From Octopus bimaculoides (taxonomy: Eukaryota), in the NCBI RefSeq assembly GCF_001194135.2, contig NC_068982.1, positions 35,024,243-35,088,242 of the forward strand: a DNA stretch of 64,000 bases, in the 5' to 3' direction. Shown in pieces: positions 2,150 through 49,162 of the stretch. Position 1 is the stretch's first letter. The number at the start of each line of letters is the position of its first letter. The notes beneath the pieces are model-generated. The model had not been told where the DNA came from. It did no database searches and worked only from the letters and a program-made list of their open reading frames with translations. The position numbers and the translations under genes are program-made.

Positions 2150-2237
<88 letters not shown>

Positions 2238-2261
2238 TGTGTGTGTGTGTGTGTGGATGGA

Positions 2262-5775: not shown

Positions 5776-6029
5776 AAATATTTAATATAGGGGACACTAG
5801 TCTATGCAAATATCTAAATGTAGACGTGAGAACGAAATAACATAAAAAATATATAGATAAATTATCGCACAAAATTATCTTAAATTTGGTTAAAATAATC
5901 TGATGTCTTTTGGTGGATGGGGATTACAAAACATGTGGGAGGTGGCGTTTGCAAGATATTTCTTGGTGAGAGGATGTGCTGAGCTATGAAAGGTCCACAA
6001 GCAATTCTCCACACAATTTGATGAAACTC

Positions 6030-6824
6030 TGCTATATCACGGCATCTAATAATATCAGAGACCTGGGTGTAATTGTTGATAACAATCTCAGTTGGAGTGC
6101 CCACATCAACAATAAGGTCAATATAGCTCGTAGGATGAGCTCCTGGATCTTAAGAACCTTCCGGTCCAGAGAACAAGGTGTCATCATTCCACTTTTCTCC
6201 TTTGTACGGCCACTCCCCAAATATTGCTGCCCCTTGTGGTCTCCCCATACAAAACAAAACATCTCGAGGATTGAATCACCCCAGAGGGCATTCACTAAAC
6301 GAACTGAAGGCATGACTGATCTCGATTACTGGGACCGCCTTAAAACCTTGAAACTCTACTCTCTCCAACGCCGCCGCGAGCGGTACATCATTTGTACGAT
6401 GTGGAGAATATACCGCCAGCATTGCCCAAACGACCTGAATATTAGTTTCAAGGTTCATCCAAGGCTGGGACCACGCGCCATACGTCCCCTGCCCAATTCA
6501 GGATCACAACATATAGGTACACTGCGACATAATTTCTTTTCCTCAACAGGTCCTGCCCTGTTTAACATTGTCCCAAAACTGATCAAAGAGGAAAAGGATC
6601 CCATCACCTTTAAACGGAGTCTGGACAGTTTCCTTCAAGGAATACCAGATAAGCCACCCATACCTGGATACAACTCACTCAAAAAGAACTCACTACTTGA
6701 ATGGATCATAAACAAAACTTGACTTAAAAAGGATTTAGATATTCCTATCAGGTGGTGCTATTAAGTTAGGCATGGCCTGGACCAATCTTTGGTCGAAACA
6801 TGTCTAGGTTTATCTAAGTTTATC
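6030..6824 (+). mobile_element. 5'-truncated CR1/Jockey-group LINE with intact 3' end
   Basis: ORF 5976-6722 contains IRDLGVIVDNNLSWSAHIN..YCCPLWSP..DYWDRLKTLKLYSLQRRRERY..LFNIVPK..FKRSLDSFLQGIPDKP. It is followed by a 3' stem-loop (6767-6806) and a short CTAAGTTTAT-like tandem tail. Confidence 0.88.
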
Positions 6825-9471: not shown

Positions 9472-9776
9472 NNNNNNNNNNNNNNNNNNNNNNNNNNNNN
9501 NNNNNNNNNNNNNNNNNNNNNNNNNNNNNNNNNNNNNNNNNNNNNNNNNNNNNNNNNNNNNNNNNNNNNNNNNNNNNNNNNNNNNNNNNNNNNNNNNNNN
9601 NNNNNNNNNNNNNNNNNNNNNNNNNNNNNNNNNNNNNNNNNNNNNNNNNNNNNNNNNNNNNNNNNNNNNNNNNNNNNNNNNNNNNNNNNNNNNNNNNNNN
9701 NNNNNNNNNNNNNNNNNNNNNNNNNNNNNNNNNNNNNNNNNNNNNNNNNNNNNNNNATATATATATATATATATAA

Positions 9777-12017: not shown

Positions 12018-12645
12018 TTTTGGCTCAAGGCCAGCTATTTCGGAGGAGGGGATAAGTCAATTATATCGACCCCCAGCACTCAACTGGTACTTATTTTATC
12101 CACCCCGAAAGGATAAAAGGCGAAGCCGACTTCAACAGAATTTGAACTCAGAGCGTAAAGACGGATGAAATGCCGCTAAACATTTTGCCCGGCGTATTAA
12201 CGATTCTGCTAAAGGATGTATGAATATTGACTTCAAATTTTGACACAAGGCCAGTAATTTCGAAGGAGAATATTAGTCGATTACATCGATTCCAGCGCTC
12301 ACTTCGTATTTATTTTATCCACCCTGGAAGGATGAAAGGCAAAATTGTGACCTCGGCTGAATTTGAACTCAGGACATAAAGATGGACGAAATGCCGACAA
12401 AAGTTTTGCCCGGTGTATTAACGCAAGAGGATAAATGAATATTCTTTTCTACTCTAGGCACAAGGCCCGAAATTTTTGAGAGGGGGCCAGTCGATTAGAT
12501 CGACTCTAGTAAGCAACTGGTACTTAATTTATCGACCTCGAAAGGATGAAAGGCAAAATTTTGACCTCGGCTGAATTTGAACTCAGAACATAAAGACGGA
12601 CGAAATGCCGTTAAGCGTTTTGCCCGGTGTATTAACGATTCTGCA
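12018..12645 (-). mobile_element. Three head-to-tail family A SINE copies (~12018-12210, ~12232-12424, ~12445-12645)
   Basis: Each contains aactggtacttattttat.accccgaaaggatgaaaggc..gaatttgaactcag..aaagacgga.gaaatgccg. The B-box-like GAGTTCAAATT is on the minus strand. Confidence 0.9.
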
Positions 12646-12679
12646 AGAGGATAAATGAATATTATCACTTAGAGAGCGA

Positions 12680-12875
12680 AGGCGTAAGCGCCTCAAAGTT
12701 CTGAGTGGAATTTCTTCCAGCTTTACGTTCTGTGTTCAAATTCCGTTGAGGTCGATTTTGCCTTTAATCTTTTCGATAAAATAAGAAGCAGTTGAGCACT
12801 GAGATCAGTGTAATCGACTTACCATTGCCCCTCAAAATTGCTGGCCTTGTGCTAAAACTTGAAACCATTATTACT
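12680..12875 (+). mobile_element. Family A SINE
   Basis: ttacgttctgtgttcaaattccgttgaggtcgattttgcctttaatcttttcgataaaataag..gagcactg..gtaatcgactt..gctggccttgtgc. Confidence 0.75.
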
Positions 12876-13129
12876 TAGAGTGTGAGTAATGTACATCCAA
12901 GGGCGACGTTTTCGCTTACACTACAAGTGACAAAATAATGCTAACCTTGTTTTACATTCGCATAATAATGTGTAAAAAGGGTGAGTATATTATTGATGAT
13001 GTTATTGACTAGCTCCAGGTCAGTCTAAGACTAAACAGAACTATGGTCAGATACGTTCCACTCATAACCATCACATTTTTCTCTCGGATGTTACAAATCT
13101 AGCACATTATTCAATATATTCTTTCCAAT

Positions 13130-13323
13130 TAAAGGCGAGTTGTCAGAGTTGTTAGCACGTCGGCCAAAATGCTTAGTGGCATTTCGTCCATCTCTACATT
13201 CTGAGTTCAAATTTCGCCAAGGTCGACTTTGCTTTTCATCCTTTTGAAGTCGATAAAACAAGTACCAATTAAATCGACTTTTACTCTCCCTTGAAATTGC
13301 TGGCCTTGTGCCAAAATTTGAAA
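13130..13323 (+). mobile_element. Family A SINE, full head
   Basis: aaggcgagttgtcagagttgttagcacg..ttctgagttcaaatttcgccaaggtcgactttgcttttcatcc..gctggccttgtgccaaaatttgaaa. Confidence 0.85.
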
Positions 13324-13611
13324 GCAGTATGTTCCTCCCATTTTGAAAATTGTAAGGAAATTTGACTGCTATACTTTGAAAGTCAAACAACTATAAAGAG
13401 CTGCTTATTCCAGTCATTTTACTCTTAGGAAAGTTTTGAAAGACATCCTGTATCTCAGCGGACTCCTACACAGATAATGTATTTCTGTTAATTATTTTCT
13501 TTCTTTTTTTACTGTTAAACTTAAATATTTCAAGCAATTAAACAAATCATACAAGTGAGTGTTTGAATGGATTAGCAAAGCTAAATCCATCACACTCTAC
13601 AAATAAGAATT

Positions 13612-13853
13612 TAACGATTCTTGTTTCTTTATTGCCCACAAGGAGCTAAACATAGAGGGGACAAACAAGGACAGACAAAGGGATTAAGTCGATTACATCG
13701 ACCCCAGTGCGTAACTGGTACTTAATTTATCGACCCCCGAAAGGATGAAAGGCAAAGTCGACCTCGTCCGAATTTGAACTCAGAACGTAACGGCAGACGG
13801 AATACCGCTAAGCATTTCGCCCGGCGTGCTAACGATTCTGCTTGACCACCGGC
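13612..13853 (-). mobile_element. Family A SINE, low divergence, with alternative 3' tail
   Basis: Core near consensus (gaccccagtgcgtaactggtacttaatttatcgacccc.gaaaggatgaaaggcaaagtcgacctcg..). Tail ttctttattgcccacaaggagctaaacatagaggggacaaacaagg is not seen in the other copies. Confidence 0.9.
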
Positions 13854-13861
13854 TTAGGCAT

Positions 13862-14085
13862 GTATGTATAATCTTTTCTATGATAAGCACAAGGCCTGAA
13901 ATGTTGGCGGAGGGGCTAGTCGATTGCAAAGACCTCAGTACTCAACTGGTACTCATTTCAACGACTCTGAAAGGAGGAAACGTAAAGTAGACCCCAGCAG
14001 AATTTCAGCTCAGAACAAAGAACGGATGAAATGTCGTTAAATATTTTATCCGATGCGCTAACGATTCTACTTGCTCACCGGCTTA
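13862..14085 (-). mobile_element. Family A SINE, diverged
   Basis: gcacaaggcctgaaat..ctcaactggtactcattt..gaatttcagctcagaac..ctaacgattctac. Confidence 0.75.
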
Positions 14086-15394: not shown

Positions 15395-16258
15395 CAGAGT
15401 GCGATGGGTAAATTATCATCATTTTATATTTTAATTTCGAGCATGTACATTGTTTGCTTTTGATTTTGTCGACTACACTGTATAGTAGGGTCCGTTGGGC
15501 ACCGTCTATGAGAAAAACAGTACCATGACGCAATTCACTCTGTCAGAAATTTGGAAACGACATTGTGTACTGCTTGGTATTTGCGCCGGACAATTCGAAC
15601 AAATGGTGAACACACAAGACAGCCGTTAGCTTGCCGTATCCCCAAAACATGTACTGAGAGTGATAAAAATCAAACAACCTATCAACTTCATGGTGTTTGG
15701 AGTGATCACTAGTGATGGTGACGTTATGCCTCCATTCATCTTCTCACACAACCTCAGTCTCAACACAGAGGCCAACATCAAGTGCCTGGAAGAGGTAGTG
15801 CTGCCCTAGGTCAAGAGAGTGGCTGCTGGAAGACTTGTCTGGCAACAAGACTCTGCACCATTCTACACAAGCAGGAGGACCTAGTCATGGCTGTCAGACA
15901 ATTTCTGCGACTACATCACCCCTAACATCTGGCCACCTAACTCCCCAGACTGCAACCCCCTTGGTTATTGTGAGCGGAGCGCAGTTGAGTGAGAGACCTT
16001 GTAACACCAAAGATGAACTGAAGGCAAGGATTATGGCAGCGTTCACCAACTTAAAGCAACCGTCCAGAAGAGTTGCAGGAGATTCCAAAGTCGCCGGAAG
16101 CCGTGGTTGAAGCCAATGACGATTTTATTCAATAAAGTTACTCTTTAGTATTTCAAGATATTTTTTTGTAATTTTGATAAATATATCTGTTAAAATGAGA
16201 TGTCAGTGTTATTTTCATTTTTGCGTAATTTAGACGACAATATATTCACTGCACTCTG
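15395..16258 (+). mobile_element. Internally deleted Tc1/mariner element, DD37D (maT)-like
   Basis: Imperfect TIRs CAGAGTGCGATGGGTAAATTATCATC and (rc) CAGAGTGCAGTGAATATATTGTCGTC with TA on both sides. ATG at 15525 (MTQFTLSEIWKRH..) jumps to NTQDSR..MVFGVITSDG..WQQDSAP..WPPNSPDCNPL(G)Y. There are 37 residues between the second D and the third catalytic position, now G. In-frame stops. Confidence 0.88.
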
Positions 16259-24478: not shown

Positions 24479-24523
24479 CACACAGACCCGGGTTTCTGGG
24501 TAGTTACCCGTCTTCAGTGTGTG
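24479..24523 (-). ncRNA. Type I hammerhead ribozyme motif, minimal, palindromic stem III
   Basis: Minus strand: CACACA-CUGAAGA-C-GGGUA-AC-UACCC-A-GAAA-CCCGGG-UC-UGUGUG. Stem I 6/6 bp; palindromic ACCCGGGU; GUC cleavage triplet; C-A mismatch at 10.1-11.1. Confidence 0.72.
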
Positions 24524-24801
24524 ATAACCACCAACTAGTGATGAAAACTCATTCCACTTGCAAAATACTATGCTTTTTCCAGCGACAAACTGTCGCTGAT
24601 CTCGAAAAGGAGAATTAAGCTATATTAAATCTCTGAGGTAAGCAGTAACAGTACGGAATCGTAAAAAATATTTGCCAACTAAATGTGGCAGTCCCCTAGA
24701 GGGACCATATTGAAAAGAAGTAGCATTTACCCAGTGGGATGTGAGATGTTTCTGCACTTTTACATACCGTTTTATACGTATTACTGAATGTGTCGAATAG
24801 A

Positions 24802-25190
24802 TGTCCGATCCTACTCTGTCAAGGAAATCACTTTCACTAAGTTCACTGTCATTATCAGGGTCAGAATCTGATGCACAAGTTTCATCTTCAAGTTCTTTCA
24901 GAATTTCCACCAATTGACGGGGTATCACTTCATTCTCTGTCCACTTTGGCTTCAGGATTCCAGCTTCCATTGTCCATCCATGCCCTTCGTCTGTACTGAA
25001 GGCTTTACAGTGTTCGCGAGAGCCGAGCTTCCATATCCTGGTCTGGAAGTTGCTTCGCCGAACGTGTCGCTCGAGGACGTTTCTACATGGGGTCGGTGAA
25101 GCGAGATCGAATTACTCAGATTTTGAGAAATCATCCCTGACAGAGTAGGATCGGACAGTGATACTGAAAGTGATGGTGATGATTATTAAT
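24802..25190 (-). mobile_element. Rearranged C-terminal fragment of a DNA-transposon-like protein (possibly Academ/XPG-associated)
   Basis: Open minus frame ~25105-24802: PTPCRNVLERHVRRSNFQTRIWK..EGHGWTMEAGILKPKWTENEVIPRQLVEIL plus an acidic tail. This matches the LPPxxxxLxxHxxRAxYQxxIW..GW..PxW motif that I recall from such proteins; superfamily assignment is uncertain. Confidence 0.45.
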
Positions 25191-26589
25191 CGGACACTTG
25201 CAATGACTGCTGAATGTAATAGATGGTTCACAAACAATGTTGTCATCTTTGACAATTATGTGGCGTACGTGGATGGGACGAAGTTCAATGCATTACAAAG
25301 TTAATGAAACTAAAAACTGTCGTGAAATTAAGAAACAACCAGGTAAGAATTAGGATGAATGCTTACTGTAAATGTATTAATTCAAATTTTAATGATCCGA
25401 AGGGTGCTCAGCTGAGATTTCTAACTCAACTTTAAAGCAAACTCGTACATCCATTGTTTTAATTCTGTGTATATGCCTACCAAGAAGGAAGGTAGCTGCA
25501 GCAACACTTGAAATGGATCTTGTTTAAACCTGAGAGATAGAAAGTATTATACAAGCTGGTATTTGTTTCAATATTAAGATTATATGGCACATTTCATAAC
25601 GACCAACCATGTATAGCAAACTGCTATGGTGTAGGTATGGTCAACTTTTGTTTACTTTTGACTTCAACAACCTCTTTGACGAAAGTATTTGCATAATTTG
25701 ATGTTTCATTTTATAGATCAACTCTGTGATCATTTGCAATGATTCAAAGAAAGATTCTAAAGTACCACTTGCTATATTTTGCCTTACTTTTATTTGACAC
25801 ATTCAGCAATACGTACAAAACAGAATGTAAAAGTGCAGAAATATCTCGCATTCCACAGGGTAAACACTACTTCTTTTCAATTTTCTTTTACTTCTAGTAT
25901 TAAAAAGCACATGTAAACCTTCGTTTTGATTTAAACTTTCAATAAAAAAAGACGTTATATGGTCTTGGTGATAAATAAAACCTGTGAATGCGAGATATTA
26001 TAGGTAAAGGTCAAAGTTGGTGACCTTTTGACCTATAGTGACCTTTATACAGAATAAATTTGCTTATCATTTACATGAACTTGTAGATCTTGACTAGGCA
26101 ATCATTTGAAGTGGTCATTTGAAATATTTTGGCGAAGAATTGCAAAGTTAGAGCTGTTTGAATTTTCCATACCCCTAATTTCTTCCTCCAGCTGGGCGTG
26201 GTATCTTCCATCCCAGTCGTTTTGCTGGCAACATAAATTTTCGGGTTTGTTAGACCCAGGGCTACACGAAAATACCCATTAAAGTAAATCGCAAGGGCAG
26301 TGCACCATGATAACCTCTATCCCATAGCCTAACACTTATGCTGATGAACCCACAGTGGTTACTAGACAATGACAATGGAAAAGACGATGAATTGATATGG
26401 TTGCCGTTTTACCCGTTGCTTGTTACTTTTACTGAGATATACTTTGTATTTCCTTCTTTCGCCGAGGCAAATAAAAGAAACCTTAATACCAACAATGTAC
26501 TGAGATCGATGCTGTCAACTAAACCACTTACCTCAAAATTACCAGCCTTGCACCTACATTAAAAACAATTAGTAGCGTTAGTTTTGATT

Positions 26590-26890
26590 TCAAATTTTGG
26601 CACAAGACCAGCAAGTTCGGGGAATGGGGTAAGCTGATTACACCGATCCCAGTATATAACTGGTACTTATTTTATCACCCTGAAAGGATAAAAGCCAAAG
26701 TTGACCTCGACGGAATTTGAACTCAGAACTTAAAGACGGAAGATATCCCGCTAAGCATTTTGCTCGGAGTGTTAACGATTTTGCCAGCTCGCCGCCTTAA
26801 GTAATGTTGACATTAGTTTCAAATCTTGGCACCAGATCATTAAGTTTGGGATGGAGTGGGTAAGTCGATTACATCGACCCCAGTGTTCAA
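26590..26890 (-). mobile_element. Family A SINE (26590-26800) plus an adjacent partial copy (~26810-26890)
   Basis: tttggcacaagaccagc..ataactggtacttattttatc..gaatttgaactcagaac..aacgattttgccagctcgccgccttaa. Confidence 0.85.
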
Positions 26891-26944
26891 TGACCTTATC
26901 AAAGATGGACGCAGTTGGGTGTCTGTCATTGATAAGACCAAGGA

Positions 26945-27200
26945 GGTTCGAAATCATGTGATCTGGTGATTTCGGTGCTGGAGACGGCGGGTACTTATTT
27001 CCCCGTTAGCGATATAAACAGGAGTGCATTTTACACCGAAAGCCAATATGAGAGGTTCTCTCATGGTATCTACCGCAGTATTATAGTCTGTTCTAACAGA
27101 ACATCTATGTTTAAGTGGAGGTAAATGTTATCACTAGAAAAGTATTGCAGGAACAGAAAATATCAATACTTGGCAGAGGTGGGGGATAATAAACATCATT
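26945..27200 (-). repeat. Unclassified dispersed repeat, copy 2
   Basis: Reverse complement homology to 14540-14795, including both small hairpins. Confidence 0.75.
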
Positions 27201-27466
27201 ACGGAAATGAGCATGAAGTTTAATTACGCAGTCAAAAGGTTAAGTACCAGGTGAGTGCTGATACAGGCCTCGCTTTATCTCTCTTCTGTTGTTACATCCT
27301 TTACGTCCCGCTGCGTTTAGCATTGGAGATCCTTAAGTGTATCCATGCACACCCGCGTCTACATATATACATCGGTGCTACCAATATGTATATAGATATA
27401 GTTATAATAGCTGGTTTTTGAAAAGATGATTATTCAAATGGTTTAATCAGGCTGGAAATGTTATAT

Positions 27467-27559
<93 letters not shown>

Positions 27560-28440
27560 AAGTAAATAGAGAAAACCAGTCGGTCATCTATAGTTAGGTT
27601 ATTTGGACTGCTATTGCAATCTCATAAGACAATACTGATATAGTACTCTGATTAAACGTGCTACTTTTGTTCCGTACTATCACAGATTTTTCAGACCTGG
27701 GAACTTTATAAAATCCTTTCAATTTAGGAAATATTTCACATCTTTAAGGAAACTCACTGTTTAAAATCAACATCATAAAGATAAAGTTTCGTTTCCTCTC
27801 TTCAAATTTGAATTATTTCTTTCGTATTGCTGACCAAAATTTGACATATAATTCGTGTTATTCTGCCCTTTCCGGTCTTTTATCAGCTCAATTCAGTTTT
27901 GGGTAATTTTTCTTGACAACTGATACGACTGAAATCAGATCAAGTTCTAGATATTTGTACAAGTTGAAGAAAGCTGAAGAATTTTATTTGACAGGCGGGA
28001 TAAATATGTTAGAGCAATGCGACAGTATTTATATGCTTCTGTATCATAGTACTTTCATTCTATGCTTGAATAGCAATATAAATAACTGACAGTGGCCTCG
28101 TTTGAAAGAGAAATTCAACTATAGTAATACTGTTGATTTTGTTTTGTTTTTCAATTATTCACTTTTCTGCCAATCTTTTAAATGCAATTACACTAATTTT
28201 ACGACGTGAGTCTTGAAAAATGATATTACATTAAATATTTTAAATATTTACGAGCTAAAATTGGCGTTCATTTATATGTTTGTTCATTCGCACTTCATTA
28301 AATCTTTCTTCAGTTACTTTTTTCTGCAACGATACATGGGGAGAAAATTTTTTAAACTGAGTGAACAGGAAAAACAAGACATTGGTCATCCAGCCATTAT
28401 AAAGTATATCACTTGCAACTTGTCAATAAACGACGTGTTA

Positions 28441-28500
<60 letters not shown>

Positions 28501-28531
28501 GTCAGTCAGTCAATCTGTATATATATATTAT

Positions 28532-28575
<44 letters not shown>

Positions 28576-28624
28576 GTGCGTGTTTGTCAGTAAATACATA
28601 CATGCATATATATATATATATATA

Positions 28625-28698
28625 TGGCCAGATAACTGAAGAGATGGCGGCGCGGGTTTCCGCCCCGGCATCCGAAACTAGGAGTTTTATCATGGCTA
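28625..28698 (+). ncRNA. Type I hammerhead ribozyme motif with long GC-rich stem II
   Basis: Stem I UGGCCA-GAUAA / UUAUC-(A bulge)-UGGCUA; CUGAAGA 28636-28642; stem II 28643-28672 with 11 of 13 pairs and GUUU loop; one extra C; GAAA 28674-28677; stem III ACU/AGU with AGG loop; GUU triplet, predicted cut after 28686. Confidence 0.72.
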
Positions 28699-28725
28699 CC
28701 GAATAATTGCCACATNNNNNNNNNN

Positions 28726-28764
<39 letters not shown>

Positions 28765-31383
28765 GCATATATATGCATACATGTATGTACGTATGTGTGC
28801 GTATATGCATATCAGATTTCCAAAGTAATTTTACGAAGTAGGACATGACTTGCTTGCAGGTCTACAATGGTATGTCCTCTCAAAATCCAATAATGGTGTT
28901 ATTGAGGTTGTTGGGCCCATTTTGATATTCATGTTCCCCTCATTGGCTCCCTGGGTTCCGGAACCGATGTACCGTAGAATTCCGTTGTCGCAGACCCTTT
29001 ATACATACATACATACATACATACATACATACATACATACATACATGTACAATCCCTTACAACACTATGACCCCAATAGGCTTCAGGCGATTCTTGGAAG
29101 TGAAGTCTATTCTTAGCTACAACAGCGACAACATGAATGTCTTCCGTCTTTTTTCTCTGTTAAAATATTTGAGAAATATTATATTAATTTGTCCTGATAG
29201 TTAAAATTCTATTTATTTATTTGTGCAGCTGAAGATGGCACTGCATTTAAATTGNNNNNNNNNNNNNNNNNNNNNNNNNNNNNNNNNNNNNNNNNNNNNN
29301 NNNNNNNNNNNNNNNNNNNNNNNNNNNNNNNNNNNNNNNNNNNNNNNNNNNNNNNNNNNNNNNNNNNNNNNNNNNNNNNNNNNNNNNNNNNNNNNNNNNN
29401 NNNNNNNNNNNNNNNNNNNNNNNNNNNNNNNNNNNNNNNNNNNNNNNNNNNNNNNNNNNNNNNNNNNNNNNNNNNNNNNNNNNNNNNNNNNNNNNNNNNN
29501 NNNNNNNNNNNNNNNNNNNNNNNNNNNNNNNNNNNNNNNNNNNNNNNNNNNNNNNNNNNNNNNNNNNNNNNNNNNNNNNNNNNNNNNNNNNNNNNNNNNN
29601 NNNNNNNNNNNNNNACGGGTTGCGGAGAAAGAAAGAATATCTAGCCATTTGTTTGATAGTGGTAAGAATAATATGAGCATGAATTACAATTACACTTCTT
29701 ACTTTGAACGTCTGAAAAGAGTTACCATGATAATGTTGACGGGGATGAGATAAGCATGAAGATGCCGATAAGGAAAGGAAGGATGGGAAGACGGCGACAC
29801 CGACGATAATGCTAATGATGATAACGATGGTGATGCTGACGATGACGACGTTGATGATGCTGATGCTGACAAGGGGCAAGTTTATATATTTTCCTCAATT
29901 ATGTTTCATAATCCATTATAAACTGGAATTATAATGCACACACACACACACACACACACATATTCACATATATTTAGAGAGAGTTTAAGACAGAGAGAGG
30001 GAGGGAGGGAGAGATGAGTGTCTTTGAGGCTGTGTGCGTTTACGTATACATACGCTATCAAGACCAAATGTTAAACGTTGTCATTGCGCGTTCACCTCTT
30101 ATTTTTGTTTCCCATTTCCTCAAAACCGTTTAGATTTTCTGTCTACCCGTCACGGAGAATTGGTAGCGAGGAAAATGGTTAAACACCAGCTGCTTACAAT
30201 AAACAGTGAAAACTTCTCCATTGACTTACAGACTCATTAAAATCTCACGGCTGAAGGGCTTAGGCGAGATTTTCGTATAGTATTCCAATTAGTACACATT
30301 AAACCAGCAGATATAACTCACTCTGTATACATTTACGATTGCAGAAAGTTGTGGAAATAAGGTTATAAGCATGTTAAAATACACATTAACAATCCTTCTA
30401 TATGCACGCATGCACACATGCACACGCACACACACATATACACGCACACCCATATGTATATACATAGACAAATACATACATATATATATATATATATATA
30501 NNNNNNNNNNNNNNNNNNNNNNNNNNNNNNNNNNNNNNNNNNNNNNNNNNNNNNNNNNNNNNNNNNNNNNNNNNNNNNNNNNNNNNNNNNNNNNNNNNNN
30601 NNNNNNNNNNNNNNNNNNNNNNNNNNNNNNNNNNNNNNNNNNNNNNNNNNNNNNNNNNNNNNNNNNNNNNNNNNNNNNNNNNNNNNNNNNNNNNNNNNNN
30701 NNNNNNNNNNNNNNNNNNNNNNNNNNNNNNNNNNNNNNNNNNNNNNNNNNNNNNNNNNNNNNNNNNNNNNNNNNNNNNNNNNNNNNNNNNNNNNNNNNNN
30801 NNNNNNNNNNNNNNNNNNNNNNNNNNNNNNNNNNNNNNNNNNNNNNNNNNNNNNNNNNNNNNNNNNNNNNNNNNNNNNNNNNNNNNNNNNNNNNNNNNNN
30901 NNNNNNNNNNNNNNNNNNNNNNNNNNNNNNNNNNNNNNNNNNNTATATATATATATATATATATATTAATATCTAGGTGAAGTAACAGTACCAAAGCTAG
31001 AGCACGTTGCGTATCAAAGAAATGCTGCCATTGCACTATGCTACTCTCACTCTATTTACGTGCAGCACAACAAAAATCTTTCGATTTACTAAGAATACTT
31101 GACATTAGAAACCCTTACAGATCATTCAGGACAATTAACACATCTGTAATATTTTCAAAACTTTCAGATATTAGGTTTCCCATTCAAGGTCAGAAACGGT
31201 TCCGACCAGACACCATTAGCGAATGATGGTCTTTAAAGCATAAATTCAGCTTCACGTTCTGTGGTTGCTTCAATATCTGGGACAATGCTGTTAGTTGCAT
31301 CACACAAAAGAATACATTATACACTGCTTCCAAAACTGGTTGTCTTTAGCTAATAAGTACAATTCATTCCACTCGCTGACTTT

Positions 31384-31481
<98 letters not shown>

Positions 31482-31514
31482 ATTGTTATTATTATTATTA
31501 TTATTATTATTGAG

Positions 31515-32056
31515 TGAGAGAGCAGTGCATGCTATCAAAGTGACACTGGGGTACAAGTATACGAAGCCCAATATACCCATCATGACTAACTGTCTGATAA
31601 AGGTACACCAGGCACATGCATCACAACCATATGTGCGCGACAAGGTGACCTTATATCAAAATAAACAGCACATGACCGTACAGTTGGGACCCAGTTAAAA
31701 TTTTCTTCAAGTTGAGTAGCCCATCCTACTCAAAAAGTCCCTGAATAAGGTTTGTTTAAGGATGTTGAACGAAACATTCATGTTTCCAGAGGCGAATTAT
31801 TCAAACTCCCAAGAATTCCTCTACACACATGGCTATGACGCTCTCCCACTACTTCTGCTCGTGATCAGAGATGCACATATTGTCAATCACTAAAGAACAT
31901 GCTCAAGTGGTTATGGTCAAGCAACTGACAAGGAAATCAGTGACACTGAGCAGAATTTGTTGTATCCCATCTTTTATATCAAGATGAAACATGTACAATG
32001 TAACACTTCTAATCAATTAGGATGAGAAGCCCTGAGAGCCAGTGCCTGGTACGGCA

Positions 32057-32060
<4 letters not shown>
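31515..32060. repeat. Probable interspersed repeat (retroposon-like) between (TAT)n tracts
   Basis: Complex ~540-bp block bounded by trinucleotide tracts; resembles a common octopus repeat from memory. Only one copy in the window, so not self-verifiable. Confidence 0.4.
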
Positions 32061-32141
<81 letters not shown>

Positions 32142-33225
32142 GTTAGTATGTTCCTTTGAACTGAACCATCTGATAGCCCTTGCCAACGTCGCACCAATAA
32201 TCAAAAAGATATAAAATTCTAAAAACAAAAGTCCTGCTCTCTGCCGTGTCTCTGCCGTGTCCCACCCCCAAAAAACTGTAATCAGTACTTGGCTTATTTT
32301 CTCCTTCCTTGAATCAGAATCTTTTAAAAGTCATTTTCTGTTCCCGCCTTCCCTACAGGCATCAAGCTAGAAGTCGAACATCAATCGACCCCAACCTTGA
32401 TATATTCTAGACATCCTTTAGAAGTCTTGTATTAGTGTCTTTGAACTGCTGAAGAACTTTAAATTGGCAATCAAACAATTCTAGTCTTTAAAGTATTGAA
32501 AATTTACTGTAAACTATAGTAACCACTAAAACTAGTTAGATCCTACTTACTTGTTCGATATTTCACTCGTTTGGTTTTGATTATTCTCTGCACTGTTGGT
32601 TCTAATATTTCCATCGAGAAGCCTGCAGCATGTTGGATATATTATTCGCTCTATTCTACGTAGTATTGGAACTGATGCCACAAATATTTCCATTTGAGAA
32701 AACTCACTCAAAACTTGCGAAATAGAAAATTTCTTCTTTCGTGTCATCTCAAGGATTGCAGGATTCAAAACAAACATTTTCTCCAACTGTAACTTGTATT
32801 CAGTTTTTTAAACTTCTACAAAACCGGGAAACAGATTTTAAATACTAAAGATGATTTTAAATTGTTTCATTCTCCTCCAGTTCCTAGCATTTTGTTTTTC
32901 GCTATGACCACTTTGCTTTAAGATCTGCAAGGAATTCACAAAAATTGGGGTTGGTGGAGCCCAAGGACCAACATTTTGTCTACGACAAGGATTTTTCTCC
33001 GTGATAAGATGCAGTGAATGGCTTTCTTACGGGTTCTAATATGTCTCAAGCATATTTGAACTGGTAACAAGTTTATATTTGAATATATCACTGCTTAGAG
33101 CTTCTAATCCGTATTTCAAAACAACCGTGGCATCGATTAGCGCAACCAGTTGCAGTAGTTTGACTGGAATATAATATGAGAGAACTGATCCCTCGTAGTC
33201 AGTTCGGAGCGTCTTTCTCTTCAGT

Positions 33226-33277
33226 AGTCTATGCTGAAGAGGGGATAACTACTCCGAAATGCATACATCCATCGACT
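33226..33277 (+). ncRNA. Type I hammerhead ribozyme motif
   Basis: Stem I AGUCUAUG/CAUCGACU (7 of 8 bp); CUGAAGA 33234-33240; stem II GGGG/CUCC with AUAACUA loop; GAAA 33256-33259; stem III AUG/CAU with CAUA loop; AUC triplet, predicted cut after 33269. Confidence 0.75.
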
Positions 33278-33627
33278 TGGGTAGAGCGTGCCACGGACTA
33301 ACTTGGTATGTTTAAACTCTTTAGTCTGCAGCGATAATGTTTCTCCATGTCAAAAGGCAGGGAATGACTTTATTAGTGACGCGAATATATTTTAAGCATA
33401 TTTGAACTGGGCACAAGATTATACTAAGGGTGAATATATCCAATAATGGTTAAGCACCCGCTAAGGTCGAATCTCCTTCCAAATATTATCTTATATCTTC
33501 CATTGACATCTATCCACCGACACTTCTAAATTCAAATCTCGACTGATTATTCATTATCTCATACAATGAGGCGGACAACTTTGATAAAAATCTATATCCA
33601 ATATATTGCAATCTTTCTCTTTCCGAC

Positions 33628-33653
33628 TATTCCTCAGATTATACATGTAGATA

Positions 33654-33693
<40 letters not shown>

Positions 33694-33719
33694 TATCTAC
33701 ATGTATAATCTGAGGAATA
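33628..33719. repeat. Perfect 92-bp palindrome (33-bp arms around (AT)13) abutting a gap
   Basis: tattcctcagattatacatgtagatatgtgtgc (33628-33660) is the exact reverse complement of 33687-33719; the N gap starts at 33724. Confidence 0.9.
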
Positions 33720-36539
33720 TATANNNNNNNNNNNNNNNNNNNNNNNNNNNNNNNNNNNNNNNNNNNNNNNNNNNNNNNNNNNNNNNNNNNNNNNNNNNNN
33801 NNNNNNNNNNNNNNNNNNNNNNNNNNNNNNNNNNNNNNNNNNNNNNNNNNNNNNNNNNNNNNNNNNNNNNNNNNNNNNNNNNNNNNNNNNNNNNNNNNNN
33901 NNNNNNNNNNNNNNNNNNNNNNNNNNNNNNNNNNNNNNNNNNNNNNNNNNNNNNNNNNNNNNNNNNNNNNNNNNNNNNNNNNNNNNNNNNNNNNNNNNNN
34001 NNNNNNNNNNNNNNNNNNNNNNNNNNNNNNNNNNNNNNNNNNNNNNNNNNNNNNNNNNNNNNNNNNNNNNNNNNNNNNNNNNNNNNNNNNNNNNNNNNNN
34101 NNNNNNNNNNNNNNNNNNNNNNNNNNNNNNNNNNNNNNNNNNNNNNNNNNNNNNNNNNNNNNNNNNNNNNNNNNNNNNNNNNNNNNNNNNNNNNNNNNNN
34201 NNNNNNNNNNNNNNNNNNNNNNNNNNNNNNNNNNNNNNNNNNNNNNNNNNNNNNNNNNNNNNNNNNNNNNNNNNNNNNNNNNNNNNNNNNNNNNNNNNNN
34301 NNNNNNNNNNNNNNNNNNNNNNNNNNNNNNNNNNNNNNNNNNNNNNNNNNNNNNNNNNNNNNNNNNNNNNNNNNNNNNNNNNNNNNNNNNNNNNNNNNNN
34401 NNNNNNNNNNNNNNNNNNNNNNNNNNNNNNNNNNNNNNNNNNNNNNNNNNNNNNNNNNNNNNNNNNNNNNNNNNNNNNNNNNNNNNNNNNNNNNNNNNNN
34501 NNNNNNNNNNNNNNNNNNNNNNNNNNNNNNNNNNNNNNNNNNNNNNNNNNNNNNNNNNNNNNNNNNNNNNNNNNNNNNNNNNNNNNNNNNNNNNNNNNNN
34601 NNNNNNNNNNNNNNNNNNNNNNNNNNNNNNNNNNNNNNNNNNNNNNNNNNNNNNNNNNNNNNNNNNNNNNNNNNNNNNNNNNNNNNNNNNNNNNNNNNNN
34701 NNNNNNNNNNNNNNATATATATATCCAACGCTATCAGCAACAATAAAACAACCACCAAATTCACTACTCTAAAATTATTAGAACAACCATTAAATTCCTT
34801 CCCCAACTACAACAACAACAACTGCAACAATCCACAATATAAATACAGCTACTATTCTCTCGCCACCAAATTTACCAACACCCTTCTTGCTAGCATAATA
34901 GGCTCCCATCACGAACAGTGCACTCTCACTGCTACACCATAACACCAACACAAACGCTATGCTGACATCGTTACAACAACACAAACTCTCTGTTGGCAAC
35001 GCTACAAATACTTGTCCCCTTGCTACTATCATCATCGTTATCATCATCAACGACCACCCCGCAAACTAGCGCTTCCACATCGACCACCTTTAATAATATT
35101 CTCATTACCCACAACCCCTATCAACAAAGATATCTCACATAAAATGGATTTAGTAATTTATTACCTCAAACTTGCTGCCTAATAATAAACCCAATGATAG
35201 ATTTCTATCTTGTTAAATCTATTACATCATCCTGAGGTGCAAAACATGAGAGGTTAACATTCTCAGTCTACGAACTGCAGATATTTATTTTAGTCTTATA
35301 TTCTGTATCTGACTTCAGTTTTGGACTGTAGATATGCTGGGACACCGTCTTGTAGGGTATGGTGGATTATATCCCCCACTTTTACTCATTCGGTCGATCG
35401 TAACTTATTTTTGGCGACGTTTTAAAGGTGAACTGCAAAGAGAACAGGAGCAGGACTTGAAATCCTAATCTAAAAGGGACGTATTTGAATGCGGCAAAAT
35501 ATTTCATAATGGCGCTCTAGTGGGCAAGATAATTATATCTATTTATTTAAGGACTATGTCCTATTTAGAATTGTATAATATTTTACTACATATTTAACTT
35601 AAATGCTGAAATTAATTATGTCTAGAGAACAACTAATAAATGATAGTCTTGAAACATATGCACGAGCGTGTGCACATATGTGTATGTGTGTGTTTATAAA
35701 TGTAGGTATGCATATATATATACATTTATAAGTAGAAATATATATATGTATATACACACGCACATACATCAAGCACACAAAAACACACGCGAACGCACAC
35801 ACGGACAACACACACACACGCACTCACTCGCTCACACACACATACACACGAATTATTGCTGTTTCAAAATGTGTTTGATCCAGCTATGCATACTATATAG
35901 TTACTGTTAACATATTAGCATCAAAAGCTAACAAAGAGATTACTTTGAAGAGGAGAAAAATATTTTGTGATTCAACTGATAAATACCGTTTAATAAAAAT
36001 CTTTCTTTTAGTGTCCTCATACGTATATATAAAATAATAAAATAAAAATAAAACATAATTCAACCAGAACAATGAAGTCACCATAATAAATTACAGCATT
36101 CATATGAGAGGTACAACGCAATGCTAACACCCTTTCGCTCTAAAACAAAACGTCAGTCAGGTGTCAAATAGTACTCTAGTCATTCTCATCTGCTACAATT
36201 TGTTCAGAAAACCTGTAGTTCTATTTGAATGAAGTTGCTTGACCTTCCTCTCTATGATCCATTAAGGCTGGTTACTACATACATAATCATGAATTCTATT
36301 ACATAGTCCTCTGTTTTTTTTTTGTTTTTTTTTTTGCAATTGGCCATCCCTTTTTAGTTGTCATGACATGCATTTTAACTTAACCCTTTTAATAGAGTTC
36401 CTTTATACTGCGCACGAACTACTCAATCCCAAACATTTCACTGTTGTGATCTCGTGATTAAAGTGGCCCACTGGAAAATAATTCTGTTCATTATCACTGG
36501 TACGTCTTAGACAAGGAATCTTTTAAAATATTTTACACA

Positions 36540-43749: not shown

Positions 43750-43805
<56 letters not shown>

Positions 43806-43809
43806 CATT

Positions 43810-43987
43810 TCTATTATAGACACAAGGCCTGAAATTTGCGGAGAGAGAGGTAAGATGATTACATCGACCCCAGTGCGAAACTGGTACTTATTTAATCAAC
43901 CCCGAAAGGATGAAAGGCAAAGTCAACCTCGGCGGAATCCGATAAGCATTTCATGCAGCGCGCTAAGGATTCTGCCAGATCGCCACC

Positions 43988-44668: not shown

Positions 44669-46075
44669 TTTTTTATTACCCACCAGGAGACAATACATAA
44701 CATGTGGGGACACACAACAAGAAAAAAATAGGACAAACGTATAAAAAAATATATGAAAGAGTAAAAAAAAATGAAAAAAATGGAATTAAGCTACTCGGCC
44801 TCATATCCGTGCAGCCTCATTTATATCTTTTCTCTATTAAACCCAGTTCCTTTAAGAATGTCTGTTTTATATTCTTTTCAAAATATCTGTGTAATCTATA
44901 ATTAATGGCATCTCATCTCTGTCCAAGTTTACTTCCCAATACTCATACCCATAATCAAATCTTTCTAATATATCTGTTCGTTCTTTGGTTAATTTCACAC
45001 AACTGTGCCACTCCTTCACATTATCATGCTCCTCAGTCTCCACGCTTTTTACATCTTTCCATGAAGCTATATCCTGGTTTAGTTCTTATGTCATAAATCA
45101 TACCTATAAAACTTTTTTCCTTTTAGCTGGGGGAGGGGAATTTTGGGGGTCCTTGTGAGCGTGTGTCTATTTTTTATTTTAGTGTCGGAGGGGAATGGGT
45201 AGGCTTGGTGTCTGTGGTAGTTGTGAGGCTGAGAGGGTGTGGGTTGGTGTTTTAAGCCCGTATCACTTGCCTTTTTTTCGTTTTCTTTTGTTTCCTCCAC
45301 TCACCGTCCTCCACGTTTCACGCCTCTACTCCATTGCTGGCGGCAAAGTCTTCTTTTTTCCTGTTTCCTCCACCGGTTCTTCCATTTTCTTCTCTTGTTC
45401 TTCCGTTGTCTTTTTGGTCGGTGAAGGGCAGTCCACTCTAATGTGGCCGTTTAGACCACATTTGTAATATCGAGGGATTCTGCCTTTACCCTCATTATCA
45501 CCGCGTCCATCGTAATGGTTTCCGTCGCCCTTTCCAACGTTTCCGCCGACCTTTACGCTGGTTGCACGTCGTCCAAGGTACGTGGGTAGAAGGACTATTT
45601 CTTCGTTTTTGATGGTTTCTGCTGCGCGCCTTTTTATTGTTGCCTTGTCTTTCATCCTCACTTACTCCGTACCAAATTTGTTTCCTCTTGCCAGGTATGT
45701 CATTTCATGCCAAATTGGCCTAAGCGCTTTCTCAATTTGGCTTGCAGTCATAATGTCTATTTTTCCTACTTTAACCGAATAAGTCTTGAACGTAATGTTT
45801 CTTTCCCTTATGTCAATCAGCATTTCCTCCGGGAGGGACAAGTCCACATTATACCCGTCCCTACTTAGCAAACCTTTAGAACTTTCCTTTTCAATTTTGC
45901 TCTTTTCCCAATAACTCTCAACAATTCATCTTCAGAAGACGACAACTCAGTAAAGCTGACATCCGAATAGAACATTCTCTTCTTCCTCTCCATTAGGCCA
46001 ACTCTCCTCATATGAGGAGGGAAAGCACAAACACACTGCGACAAGGCAGCAAAAACCAATTAACAAATGTTTAAA
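44669..46075 (-). mobile_element. L1/Tx1-type ORF1 relic with CCHC knuckle, no ORF2 seen
   Basis: Frameshifted minus ORFs: ..TFKTYSVKVGKID..ARGNKFGT..IVLLPTYLGRR..GRIPRYYKCGLNGHIRVDCP.., then further coding-like text to ~44880, a T-rich tract and AATAAA at 44672-44677. Homologous to 61183-61672. Confidence 0.65.
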
Positions 46076-47047
46076 GAACGCTGACACAAAAAAATTATAT
46101 ATACATATACATATACATACACACACATATATATATGTATATATATATATATATATATATNNNNNNNNNNNNNNNNNNNNNNNNNNNNNNNNNNNNNNNN
46201 NNNNNNNNNNNNNNNNNNNNNNNNNNNNNNNNNNNNNNNNNNNNNNNNNNNNNNNNNNNNNNNNNNNNNNNNNNNNNNNNNNNNNNNNNNNNNNNNNNNN
46301 NNNNNNNNNNNNNNNNNNNNNNNNNNNNNNNNNNNNNNNNNNNNNNNNNNNNNNNNNNNNNNNNNNNNNNNNNNNNNNNNNNNNNNNNNNNNNNNNNNNN
46401 NNNNNNNNNNNNNNNNNNNNNNNNNNNNNNNNNNNNNNNNNNNNNNNNNNNNNNNNNNNNNNNNNNNNNNNNNNNNNNNNNNNNNNNNNNNNNNNNNNNN
46501 NNNNNNNNNNNNNNNNNNNNNNNNNNNNNNNNNNNNNNNNNNNNNNNNNNNNNNNNNNNNNNNNNNNNNNNNNNNNNNNNNNNNNNNNNNNNNNNNNNNN
46601 NNNNNNNNNNNNNNNNNNNNNNNNNNNNNNNNNNNNNNNNNNNNNNNNNNNNNNNNNNNNNNNNNNNNNNNNNNNNNNNNNNNNNNNNNNNNNNNNNNNN
46701 NNNNNNNNNNNNNNNNNNNNNNNNNNNNNNNNNNNNNNNNNNNNNNNNNNNNNNNNNNNNNNNNNNNNNNNNNNNNNNNNNNNNNNNNNNNNNNNNNNNN
46801 NNNNNNNNNNNNNNNNNNNNNNNNNNNNNNNNNNNNNNNNNNNNNNNNNNNNNNNNNNNNNNNNNNNNNNNNNNNNNNNNNNNNNNNNNNNNNNNNNNNN
46901 NNNNNNNNNNNNNNNNNNNNNNNNNNNNNNNNNNNNNNNNNNNNNNNNNNNNNNNNNNNNNNNNNNNNNNNNNNNNNNNNNNNNNNNNNNNNNNNNNNNN
47001 NNNNNNNNNNNNNNNNNNNNNNNNNNNNNNNNNNNNNNNNNNNNNNN

Positions 47048-48954: not shown

Positions 48955-49162
48955 GGTTTGAAATGTTGGTACACAAGGTCAGCAATTTCGAGAGATGGGG
49001 ACTAAGTCGATGACACCGACCCTAGTGCTCAACTGGTACTTATTTTATCGACCTAGAAAGGACGAAAAGCTAAGTTGACCCCGGCGGTACTTGAAGCCAG
49101 AACGTAAAGACGGACAAAATGTCGCTGAACATTTTGCCTGGCGTGCTAACGATTTTGCTAGA
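48955..49162 (-). mobile_element. Family A SINE
   Basis: cctagtgctcaactggtacttattttatcgacc..gaacgtaaagacggac..cgtgctaacgattttgc. Confidence 0.8.

What the first reader, a model, noticed from the sequence alone, without database searches (positions are those of the whole stretch)
24479..33277. Three type I hammerhead ribozyme folds within 9 kb: candidate cephalopod retrozyme/Penelope-related family
Seen: scanning both strands by eye for CUGANGA..GAAA gave three loci where all three stems and an NUH triplet close correctly (24479-24523 minus, 28625-28698 plus, 33226-33277 plus). All use CUGAAGA. Two share GGG(A)TAACTACYC around loop II. Known: animal type I hammerheads are typically carried by Penelope-like elements and by small non-autonomous retrozymes that make circular RNAs. 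Inference: these are dispersed members of one or more such families. No Penelope RT or GIY-YIG ORF is visible in the window, so they would be non-autonomous or orphaned.
Basis: partly seen in the sequence, partly recalled or inferred. Interest (0 to 1): 0.88.

Follow-up and report, generated by a model that had tools for sequence, protein, structure and literature searches.

The report
Three orphan hammerhead ribozyme motifs, octopus
Three short sequences in this octopus genome window carry an intact hammerhead self-cleaving-ribozyme core far more often than chance allows, and they are most likely solitary leftovers of Penelope-like or retrozyme retroelements, an expected kind of feature in an invertebrate genome.

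Summary
All three type I hammerhead folds are in the sequence at the stated coordinates, and none touches an assembly gap. Each has the full CUGAAGA...GAAA...UH core.

They are not chance. A loose descriptor finds 4 loci in the window, against 0.19 in dinucleotide shuffles and 0.11 for 2,700 permuted-core decoys run on the real sequence. At a tighter setting it finds 3 against 0.02.

- **c2 (28625-28698)** is the strongest. It has an 11-bp helix I and a 12-bp GC-rich helix II, and it starts directly at an (AT)n tract.
- **c1 and c3** share helix II and loop 2. Both have a palindromic helix III, the hallmark of metazoan dimer-type hammerheads (2 hits against 0.0085 expected).

Important caveats apply:
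- Rfam gives no hammerhead hit, even at E<=10 on 100-nt stretches.
- Each fold has a defect.
- The hammerhead fold lies 5-9 kcal/mol above the minimum-energy fold.
- A 10-bp hairpin sequesters the c3 core.
- There are no tandem copies, no homologous flanks and no RT or GIY-YIG ORF.
- No further copies could be found, because no cephalopod genome is searchable with these tools.

The window is octopus DNA, and octopus genomes carry Penelope-like elements. My verdict is real hammerhead-derived motifs, probably orphan or inactive retroelement relics: a new member of a known kind, of modest interest.

The parts
24479..24523 (-). c1: type I hammerhead-like motif. Helix I is 24518-24523 paired with 24479-24484 (CACACA/UGUGUG). 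The core CUGAAGA is 24511-24517. The helix II hairpin is 24497-24510 (C|GGGU-AACU-ACCC|A). G12-A14 is 24494-24496. The palindromic helix III ACCCGGGU is 24486-24493. C17 is 24485, and the predicted cut is between 24485 and 24484.
   Evidence: helix energy -11.8; about 0.01 decoys per window are as good; dimer-type descriptor.
28625..28698 (+). c2: type I hammerhead-like motif. Helix I is 28625-28635 paired with 28687-28698 (5+6 bp, A28692 bulged). The core CUGAAGA is 28636-28642. Helix II is 28643-28673 (12 bp, two mismatches, one bulged C). G12-A14 is 28674-28676. Helix III is 28677-28685 (ACU/AGU, loop AGG). U17 is 28686, and the predicted cut is between 28686 and 28687.
   Evidence: the minimum-energy fold keeps helices I and II; helix energy -30.1; 0 of 2,694 decoy descriptors reach it.
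33226..33277 (+). c3: type I hammerhead-like motif. Helix I is 33226-33233 paired with 33270-33277 (7 bp plus a U.C mismatch). The core CUGAAGA is 33234-33240. Helix II is 33241-33255 (GGGG/CUCC, loop AUAACUA). G12-A14 is 33256-33258. Helix III is 33259-33268 (AUG/CAU, loop CAUA), with C17 at 33269. The alternative dimer-type register is the palindrome AUGCAU at 33259-33264, with A17 at 33265.
   Evidence: (helix energy -6.6; about 0.04 decoys per window are as good).
33217..33241 (+). Competing hairpin CUCUUCAGUA / UGCUGAAGAG (10 bp, loop GUCUA). It sequesters the c3 core and the 5' strand of helix I.
   Evidence: 92-nt fold, minimum free energy -29.2 kcal/mol, dominated by this hairpin.
32974..33101 (+). 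Left copy of a direct repeat flanking c3 (about 70% identical to 33320-33455, 346 bp offset).
   Evidence: (score 54 against a shuffle mean of 12.8).
33320..33455 (+). Right copy of the direct repeat flanking c3. Together with the left copy it could be a 1.4-unit remnant of a roughly 346-bp repeat unit (GC 41%).
28606..28625 (.). (AT)10 microsatellite that abuts the first base of c2's helix I. This is the left junction of the c2 insert and lies in contiguous sequence.
28699..28725 (.). 17 nt of unique sequence after c2 (28699-28715), then the 10-N assembly gap (28716-28725). (AT)n resumes at 28726. The 3' end of the c2 insert is therefore unknown.
28644..28706 (+). Short ORF (20 codons, MAARVSAPASETRSFIMATE) whose AUG sits at the start of helix II of c2. 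This recalls the Anolis Poseidon PLE, whose ORF starts at stem II, but here the frame stops after 20 codons.
   Evidence: comparison with PMC11167929.

Best explanation
The three loci are genuine type I hammerhead ribozyme motifs with intact catalytic cores. They were left in an octopus genome by hammerhead-bearing retroelements: Penelope-like elements and/or their non-autonomous derivatives, the non-LTR retrozymes.

c2 looks like a short, probably 5'-truncated insertion into an (AT)n microsatellite. Its long GC-rich helix II and the AUG at the start of that helix resemble hammerheads in Penelope pseudo-LTRs.

c1 and c3 have the usual metazoan architecture: a 4-bp helix II and a very short, palindromic helix III. 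RNAs of that kind cleave efficiently only when two copies pair through helix III.

Mechanism when active: the transcript folds into the three-way junction, and the 2'-OH of residue 17 attacks its own 3' phosphate. That cuts after GUC (c1), GUU (c2) or AUC/AUA (c3) and frees unit-length retroelement RNA.

At these loci each motif is solitary, on different strands, and has a defect or a competing fold. They are most likely weak or dead relics, not producers of circular RNA.

Shown: the motifs, their excess over chance, the absence of partner copies and of RT/EN, and the octopus origin. Inferred: the retroelement origin, the need for dimers, and present-day inactivity.
For: - Intact cores and closable helices at all three loci.
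- Excess over chance: 4 loci against 0.19 in shuffles and 0.107 in 2,700 decoys, of which only the true core and its alias reach 4. The excess is robust to thresholds, for example 3 against 0.02. The Poisson tail is 1e-3 to 1e-6.
- c2's helix energy of -30.1 kcal/mol is unmatched by any of 2,694 decoy descriptors.
- A dimer-type descriptor requiring a palindromic A15.1..U16.1 segment finds exactly c1 and c3, against a decoy mean of 0.0085. A palindromic helix III is a published hallmark of metazoan type I and PLE hammerheads (PMC4209133).
- c1 and c3 share helix II and loop 2 (edit distance 4 of 15). At most 1.5% of decoy pairs are that close.
- One-mismatch cores show no excess.
- c2 abuts (AT)n, and PLEs prefer AT-rich or (TA)n targets (PMC8557442; PMC11167929).
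- c3 lies in a roughly 346-bp unit with partial duplication at GC 41%. That is the size range of mussel retrozymes (PMC7229834).
- The host is octopus, and O. vulgaris has 30 recently active Penelope families (PMC13282606).
- Solo monomer copies of retrozymes are common (bioRxiv 10.64898/2026.07.22.740005).
Against: - No Rfam hammerhead hit at gathering thresholds, at E<=10 on the whole window, or on 94-121-nt stretches around each locus.
- None passes a fully strict descriptor. c1 has C.A at 10.1/11.1, c2 has a bulged C next to the core, and c3 has a mismatched helix I.
- The hammerhead fold is 5-9 kcal/mol less stable than the minimum-energy fold for each motif. A 10-bp hairpin buries the c3 core.
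- The flanks are not homologous.
- No second copy was found in the window, in 25 kb of O. vulgaris DNA, or in the metagenome, viral or prokaryote collections, apart from chance hits.
- There is no tandem arrangement and no RT/EN domain.
- The descriptor thresholds were set after seeing the candidates. The apparent compensatory changes between c1 and c3 follow from how the loci were selected, so they are not independent evidence.
Confidence: 0.6

Rival explanations
1. Only c2 is a real hammerhead relic. c1 and c3 are chance look-alikes whose shared 26 nt is coincidence, or comes from some other short conserved sequence.
For: - Taken individually, c1 and c3 are modest: about 0.01 and 0.04 decoys per window are as good.
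- Their minimum-energy folds are not the hammerhead fold.
- c1 lacks the G10.1-C11.1 pair.
- c3's CUGAAGAG is one arm of a 10-bp inverted repeat.
- The full-flank local alignment score of 16.5 lies within the range seen for shuffled pairs of comparable length.
- Rfam is negative.
Against: - Two hits of the palindromic-helix-III descriptor against 0.0085 expected.
- Helix II similarity is reached by at most 1.5% of decoy pairs.
- Both motifs have the 4-bp helix II plus palindromic helix III architecture described for metazoan hammerheads.
Confidence: 0.2
2. All three are chance matches produced by a permissive by-eye search in repeat-rich, AT-rich DNA.
For: - Rfam finds nothing.
- None passes a strict descriptor.
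- No other copies were found anywhere.
- The thresholds were chosen post hoc.
Against: - There is a 20- to 150-fold excess over two independent nulls, across many thresholds.
- c2 is unmatched by 2,694 decoy descriptors.
- Near-miss cores show no excess.
Confidence: 0.07
3. One or more of the motifs is an active, host-retained ribozyme. It could be an intronic or UTR processing element, or part of a transcribed retrozyme that yields circular RNA.
For: - The cores are fully intact, while one-mismatch variants are not enriched. That could reflect recency or selection.
- c1 sits in a longer rod-like pairing.
- Retrozyme circular RNAs are abundant in another mollusc (PMC7229834).
Against: - No tandem partner is present to give a second cut site.
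- The motifs lie on different strands.
- Helix III is weak and competing folds are strong.
- No expression or conservation data are available.
Confidence: 0.08

Closest known systems
Hammerheads in the pseudo-LTRs of Penelope-like elements (Cervera & de la Pena 2014, PMC4209133; Anolis Poseidon, PMC11167929)
   Same: - Type I topology and an intact core.
- c2: a long helix II, an AUG at the start of helix II, and insertion next to (AT)n.
- c1: an unpaired nucleotide after A9 and a palindromic helix III segment.
- The host genome carries Penelope families.
   Different: - No RT or GIY-YIG ORF and no pseudo-LTR pair carrying the motif.
- c2's irregular nucleotide is on the 3' side of helix II, not the 5' side.
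- c2's ORF stops after 20 codons.
- c2 has a long helix I (11 bp) instead of the short 4-5 bp reported.
- No family of variable copies could be shown.
Metazoan non-LTR retrozymes and satellite hammerheads (mussel, coral, axolotl, newt; PMC7229834)
   Same: - c1 and c3: a 4-bp helix II and a 1-2 bp helix III capped by a palindromic loop, the dimer-type design.
- c3 lies in a low-GC unit of about 346 bp with partial duplication, within the 170-400 bp unit range.
- Solo monomers are known for such families.
   Different: - There is no tandem array: at most 1.4 units, with a single ribozyme.
- The two repeat copies are only about 70% identical.
- The recognised loop 1 - loop 2 tertiary-contact nucleotides could not be identified.
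- There is no evidence of circular RNA.
Rfam Hammerhead_1 (RF00163) and related Rfam hammerhead models
   Same: The same conserved core nucleotides and the same three-helix junction.
   Different: No match at any threshold tried. N7 = A, the helix II base irregularities and c2's 31-nt helix II are the likely reasons.

Membership tests
Hammerhead ribozyme, type I | Conserved core C3-U4-G5-A6-N7-G8-A9 ... G12-A13-A14 ... A15.1-U16.1 followed by H17 (not G) | tested here: met
   All three loci carry it. The cut sites are GUC (c1), GUU (c2) and AUC or AUA (c3).
Hammerhead ribozyme, type I | Helices I, II and III close around the core, with helix I open (type I) | tested here: met
   Met under a loose descriptor, far above chance. 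Each motif has one irregularity, and none passes the fully strict version.
Hammerhead ribozyme, type I | G10.1-C11.1 pair at the base of helix II | tested here: inconclusive
   c3 has it. c2 has it with an adjacent bulged C. c1 has C.A, unless C and A are read as extra unpaired nucleotides flanking a G-C pair.
Hammerhead ribozyme, type I | Match to the curated covariance model (Rfam Hammerhead_1 or related) at the gathering score | tested here: not met
   No hit at gathering, at E<=10 on the window, or on short stretches around each locus.
Hammerhead ribozyme, type I | Site-specific self-cleavage | not testable with these tools
   This needs in vitro transcription or RNA end mapping.
Penelope-like element (pseudo-LTR hammerhead) | Adjacent ORF encoding a reverse transcriptase plus a GIY-YIG endonuclease | tested here: not met
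   No such domain in ORFs of 90 aa or more, nor in 20 open frames flanking the loci. The check covered ORFs only, so decayed fragments could be missed.
Penelope-like element (pseudo-LTR hammerhead) | The motif lies inside direct pseudo-LTR repeats or partial tandems | tested here: not met
   c1 and c2 have no flanking repeats. c3 lies between two direct repeats, not within them.
Penelope-like element (pseudo-LTR hammerhead) | Insertion into AT-rich or (TA)n targets | tested here: inconclusive
   c2's left junction is directly on (AT)10. The right side is hidden by the 10-N gap. c1 and c3 are not next to microsatellites.
Non-LTR retrozyme | Tandem repeats (two or more units of about 170-400 bp), each with a type I hammerhead | tested here: not met
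   TRF finds no such array. c3 has at most 1.4 units of 346 bp with one ribozyme.
Non-LTR retrozyme | A multi-copy family with covarying helices across the genome | not testable with these tools
   No cephalopod genome is searchable by DNA. Limited tries were negative: the window, 25 kb of O. vulgaris DNA, metagenome, viral and prokaryote scans, and a peptide search.
Non-LTR retrozyme | Expression as small circular RNA | not testable with these tools
   No transcript data are available.

The most novel reading that the evidence does not exclude
c1 and c3 are members of a so far undescribed cephalopod family of hammerhead-bearing non-autonomous retroelements, marked by CUGAAGA and a conserved GGG(A)UAACUACYC helix II/loop 2. 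The family would be transcribed and processed into small linear or circular RNAs in octopus tissues. c2 would mark an octopus Penelope lineage whose ORF starts inside the ribozyme, as in Anolis Poseidon.
Probability: 0.2. Interest if true: 0.45.

Novelty: new member of a known kind. Interest (0 to 1): 0.3.

Why it matters
If confirmed genome-wide, these motifs would extend the catalogue of hammerhead-bearing retroelements to cephalopods. Those genomes are unusually rich in repeats, and their neural transcriptomes are of wide interest. The motifs would also supply sequence tags (CUGAAGA plus the shared helix II) for finding the parent families and any circular RNAs they make.

There is also a practical point. 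Curated covariance models miss these irregular, dimer-type motifs, whereas a descriptor paired with a permuted-core control detects them.

As it stands, the finding is an expected kind of element: solitary, probably inactive copies.

Tried and rejected
- **Rfam searches.** At gathering thresholds, at E<=10 on the whole window, and on three short stretches, I found no hammerhead or other ribozyme. The only hits were sub-threshold microsatellite or hairpin matches to miRNA models.
- **Self-BLAST of each locus +/-400 bp.** There are no paralogous flanks. Local alignments of c1, c2 and c3 flanks against each other were at background.
- **Exact-ORF look-ups of two window ORFs.** Neither is on record.
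- **Pattern scans for the c1/c3 consensus.** I got one chance hit in a coding region of a metagenome contig and none in viral contigs.
- **Pattern scans for c2.** I found none in viral contigs. Six hits in bacterial MAGs lie in unrelated sequence; five do not meet the descriptor and one (L007) is a marginal hit.
- **Protein search with a chimeric query built from the open frames across c1, c2 and c3.** It returned no hits.
- **LINE fragment search, meant to harvest more octopus DNA.** Nearly all hits were short ENA contigs, so it was not useful.
- **The ORF next to c1.** It belongs to a 1.6-kb repeat (24719-26334) also present in O. vulgaris. c1 lies 196 bp outside that repeat, so the repeat does not explain c1.
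- **One-mismatch cores, to look for decayed relatives.** Hits were at background.
- **A fourth descriptor hit at 45877-45935 (minus strand).** I rejected it as chance level (helix energy -2.7).
- **CTGAAGA at 29229, beside the 360-N gap.** It is a simple hairpin loop, not a hammerhead.
- **MAFFT alignment of the three motifs.** It misaligns c2's GAAA. I therefore built no covariance model, and any covariation count would in any case be circular.
- **tRNA scan.** It found none.
- **Supplementary files of two papers.** They held no usable hammerhead sequences. Lunse et al. 2017 is not held.


Full report
**What is there**

I read the three loci directly. Each has the complete hammerhead core in type I order.

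- c1 (minus strand, 24523->24479): CACACA|CUGAAGA|C-GGGU-AACU-ACCC-A|GAA|ACCCGGGU|C^|UGUGUG.
- c2 (plus strand, 28625-28698): UGGCCAGAUAA|CUGAAGA|GAUGGCGGCGCGGGUUUCCGCCCCGGCAUCC|GAA|ACU-AGG-AGU|U^|UUAUC(A)UGGCUA.
- c3 (plus strand, 33226-33277): AGUCUAUG|CUGAAGA|GGGG-AUAACUA-CUCC|GAA|AUG-CAUA-CAU|C^|CAUCGACU. A second register uses the palindrome AUGCAU and cuts after A33265.

All three use N7 = A. c1 and c3 share 22 of 26 positions across the core and helix II.

'Close correctly' overstates it. c1 has C opposite A at the base of helix II. c2 has a bulged C beside G12 and a bulged A in helix I. c3 has a U.C mismatch in helix I.

**Gaps (the test requested first)**

The window has 14 N runs, and none lies inside a fold. 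c2 ends at 28698 and is followed by 17 nt of unique sequence and then the 10-N gap at 28716-28725. The left junction of the c2 insert, (AT)10 running into GGCCAG, is in contiguous sequence. The right end and the (AT)n at 28726-28774 are separated from it by an unknown length. The gaps at 29255-29614 and 30501-30943 only make the c2-c3 distance an estimate.

**Is it more than chance?**

Rfam says no. There is no match at gathering thresholds, no hammerhead among the matches with E<=10 on the whole window, and none when 94-121-nt stretches around each locus were searched with the laxest filters.

I then wrote an explicit type I descriptor loose enough to admit the three folds. It finds four loci in the window. 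I applied two nulls:

- 300 dinucleotide-preserving shuffles in 1-kb blocks gave a mean of 0.19 loci, with none reaching 4.
- 2,700 decoy descriptors with permuted core letters, run on the real sequence so that all its repeats and hairpins are kept, gave a mean of 0.107. Only the true core and its alias CUG.AGA reach 4.

The excess holds over ten threshold settings. One example is 3 observed against 0.02 expected when helix II is at least 4 bp and helix III at least 2 bp. With no irregularity allowed, the count is 0.

I ranked the hits by summed helix energy:

| Hit | Helix energy (kcal/mol) | Decoys as good |
|---|---|---|
| c2 | -30.1 | none of 2,694 descriptors |
| c1 | -11.8 | about 0.01 per window |
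| c3 | -6.6 | about 0.04 per window |
| fourth hit, 45877-45935 | -2.7 | chance level |

Cores with one mismatch are at background, 7 hits over 27 variants.

A further test used a published property that played no part in finding the loci. Metazoan type I and Penelope hammerheads have a very short helix III whose sequence is palindromic, so two copies can pair (PMC4209133). A descriptor requiring a palindromic A15.1..U16.1 segment finds exactly c1 (ACCCGGGU) and c3 (AUGCAU). The decoy mean is 0.0085, which gives a Poisson tail of 4e-5.

The similarity of c1 and c3 in helix II (edit distance 4) is reached by at most 1.5% of decoy pairs.

The apparent compensatory changes between c1 and c3 in helices I and III are a consequence of how the loci were selected, so I do not count them as evidence. 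The thresholds were also chosen after the fact. Even so, the margins are large enough that I accept the motifs as real hammerhead-derived sequences.

**Evidence against activity**

For each motif the hammerhead secondary structure is 5-9 kcal/mol above the predicted minimum: c1 -7.1 against -14.9, c3 -4.6 against -9.3, and c2 -19.0 against -27.9. c2's minimum-energy fold does keep helices I and II.

With 20 nt of flank on each side, c3's CUGAAGAG is buried in a 10-bp hairpin with the upstream CUCUUCAGUA (33217-33226), at -29.2 kcal/mol. Helix III is 2-3 bp in all three, or a single pair in c3's alternative dimer register.

The motifs lie on different strands, 4-5 kb apart. None has a tandem partner.

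**Context**

The ORF just upstream of c1 (24620-24970, minus strand) matches a hypothetical protein of Octopus vulgaris. The O. vulgaris locus I retrieved (L002, chromosome OX597814.1) shares an 85%-identical 1.6-kb repeat with window 24719-26334 but has no shared flanks. It is therefore a paralogous repeat copy, and c1 lies 196 bp outside it.

I found no reverse-transcriptase or GIY-YIG domain in ORFs of 90 aa or more, or in 20 open frames around the loci.

c2's insert begins exactly at an (AT)n tract. It also has an AUG at the first pair of helix II, opening a 20-codon frame.

c3 sits between two direct repeats about 70% identical, at 32974-33101 and 33320-33455, offset by 346 bp. The alignment score is 54 against a shuffle mean of 12.8, and the GC content is 41%.

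**Search for relatives**

No cephalopod genome can be searched by DNA with these tools, and all indirect routes failed:

- Self-BLAST of the window.
- The consensus pattern in the window.
- 25 kb of O. vulgaris DNA.
- Pattern scans of the metagenome, viral and prokaryote collections, which gave only chance hits in unrelated sequence.
- A protein search with the open frames across the motifs.

**Comparison with what is known**

In animals, type I hammerheads occur in the pseudo-LTRs of Penelope-like elements and in small tandem non-LTR retrozymes that derive from them (PMC4209133; PMC7229834; bioRxiv 10.64898/2026.07.22.740005). Solo monomers are common.

Penelope elements prefer AT-rich or (TA)n targets. 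In the Anolis Poseidon element the ORF starts at stem II of the ribozyme. O. vulgaris has 30 recently active Penelope families. Mussel retrozyme units are 350-390 bp.

c2 resembles the Penelope type. c1 and c3 resemble the canonical dimer-type retrozyme or satellite hammerheads. The defining features of membership are not met here: an adjacent RT/EN ORF, the motif inside pseudo-LTRs, a tandem array, and a multi-copy family. So I describe the motifs as working like these ribozymes and probably derived from such elements, but I do not file them as demonstrated members.

**Verdict**

The best explanation, at confidence about 0.6, is three orphan, probably weak or inactive hammerhead relics of Penelope-like or retrozyme retroelements in an octopus genome. 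This is a new member of a known kind. Interest is modest (0.3), because such motifs are expected in an invertebrate genome that carries Penelope elements.

Noticed in passing
window 24719-26334 (inverted arms 24709-24804 and 25786-25881): A 1.6-kb repeat element with an internal 96-nt inverted repeat and an acidic ORF (up to 163 aa open frame, 24623-25111 minus strand). It is 85% identical to a copy on Octopus vulgaris chromosome OX597814.1, and related ORFs occur in ENA and Logan contigs. No Pfam domain was found and the element type is unknown.
   Followed up: partly
window 33628-33719: A perfect 46-nt-arm palindrome centred on (AT)n, lying directly before the 991-N gap at 33724-34714. Several Rfam miRNA models match it below threshold on both strands. 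It may be a foldback repeat or an assembly artefact at a contig end.
   Followed up: no
window 31384-31511: (TAC)20 is followed directly by its complement (TAG)12 and then (ATT)10. This forms a long perfect hairpin and causes a sub-threshold MIR7526 match in Rfam.
   Followed up: no
window 2237-3085 and 5976-6722: Two diverged copies of the C-terminal part of a LINE-type ORF. The homologues found include longer proteins carrying the RVT_1 domain (PF00078), nearly all from short ENA contigs.
   Followed up: partly
window 45326-45661 (-) and 61183-61521 (+): Two related ORFs that look like retroelement gag fragments. The first has a weak zinc-knuckle match (zf-CCHC, E = 0.003, below the Pfam cut-off).
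   Followed up: no
window 12045-14066, 26637-26800, 43796-43942, 49028-49161 and others: Copies of roughly 100-180 bp of a dispersed, SINE-like repeat, 75-85% identical to several places in the O. vulgaris locus L002 (for example L002 8757-8963 and 12329-12762).
   Followed up: no
whole window: CTGAAGA accounts for 20 of the 36 CTGANGA sites on both strands. CTGANGA itself occurs 36 times, against 25 in shuffles. Most of these sites are unrelated to the three motifs, and the cause is unexamined.
   Followed up: no
window 15835-16110 (+): An ORF ending ...CNTKDELKARIMAAFTNLKQ... resembles, from memory, the C-terminal end of a widespread mariner/Tc1-like transposase. It has no Pfam hit.
   Followed up: no
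window gaps (14 N runs, 5,411 N in total): Most gaps are bordered by AT/AC microsatellites (for example 9472-9756, 30501-30943, 46161-47047 and 60244-60639). This suggests a short-read scaffold assembly that breaks at simple repeats.
   Followed up: no
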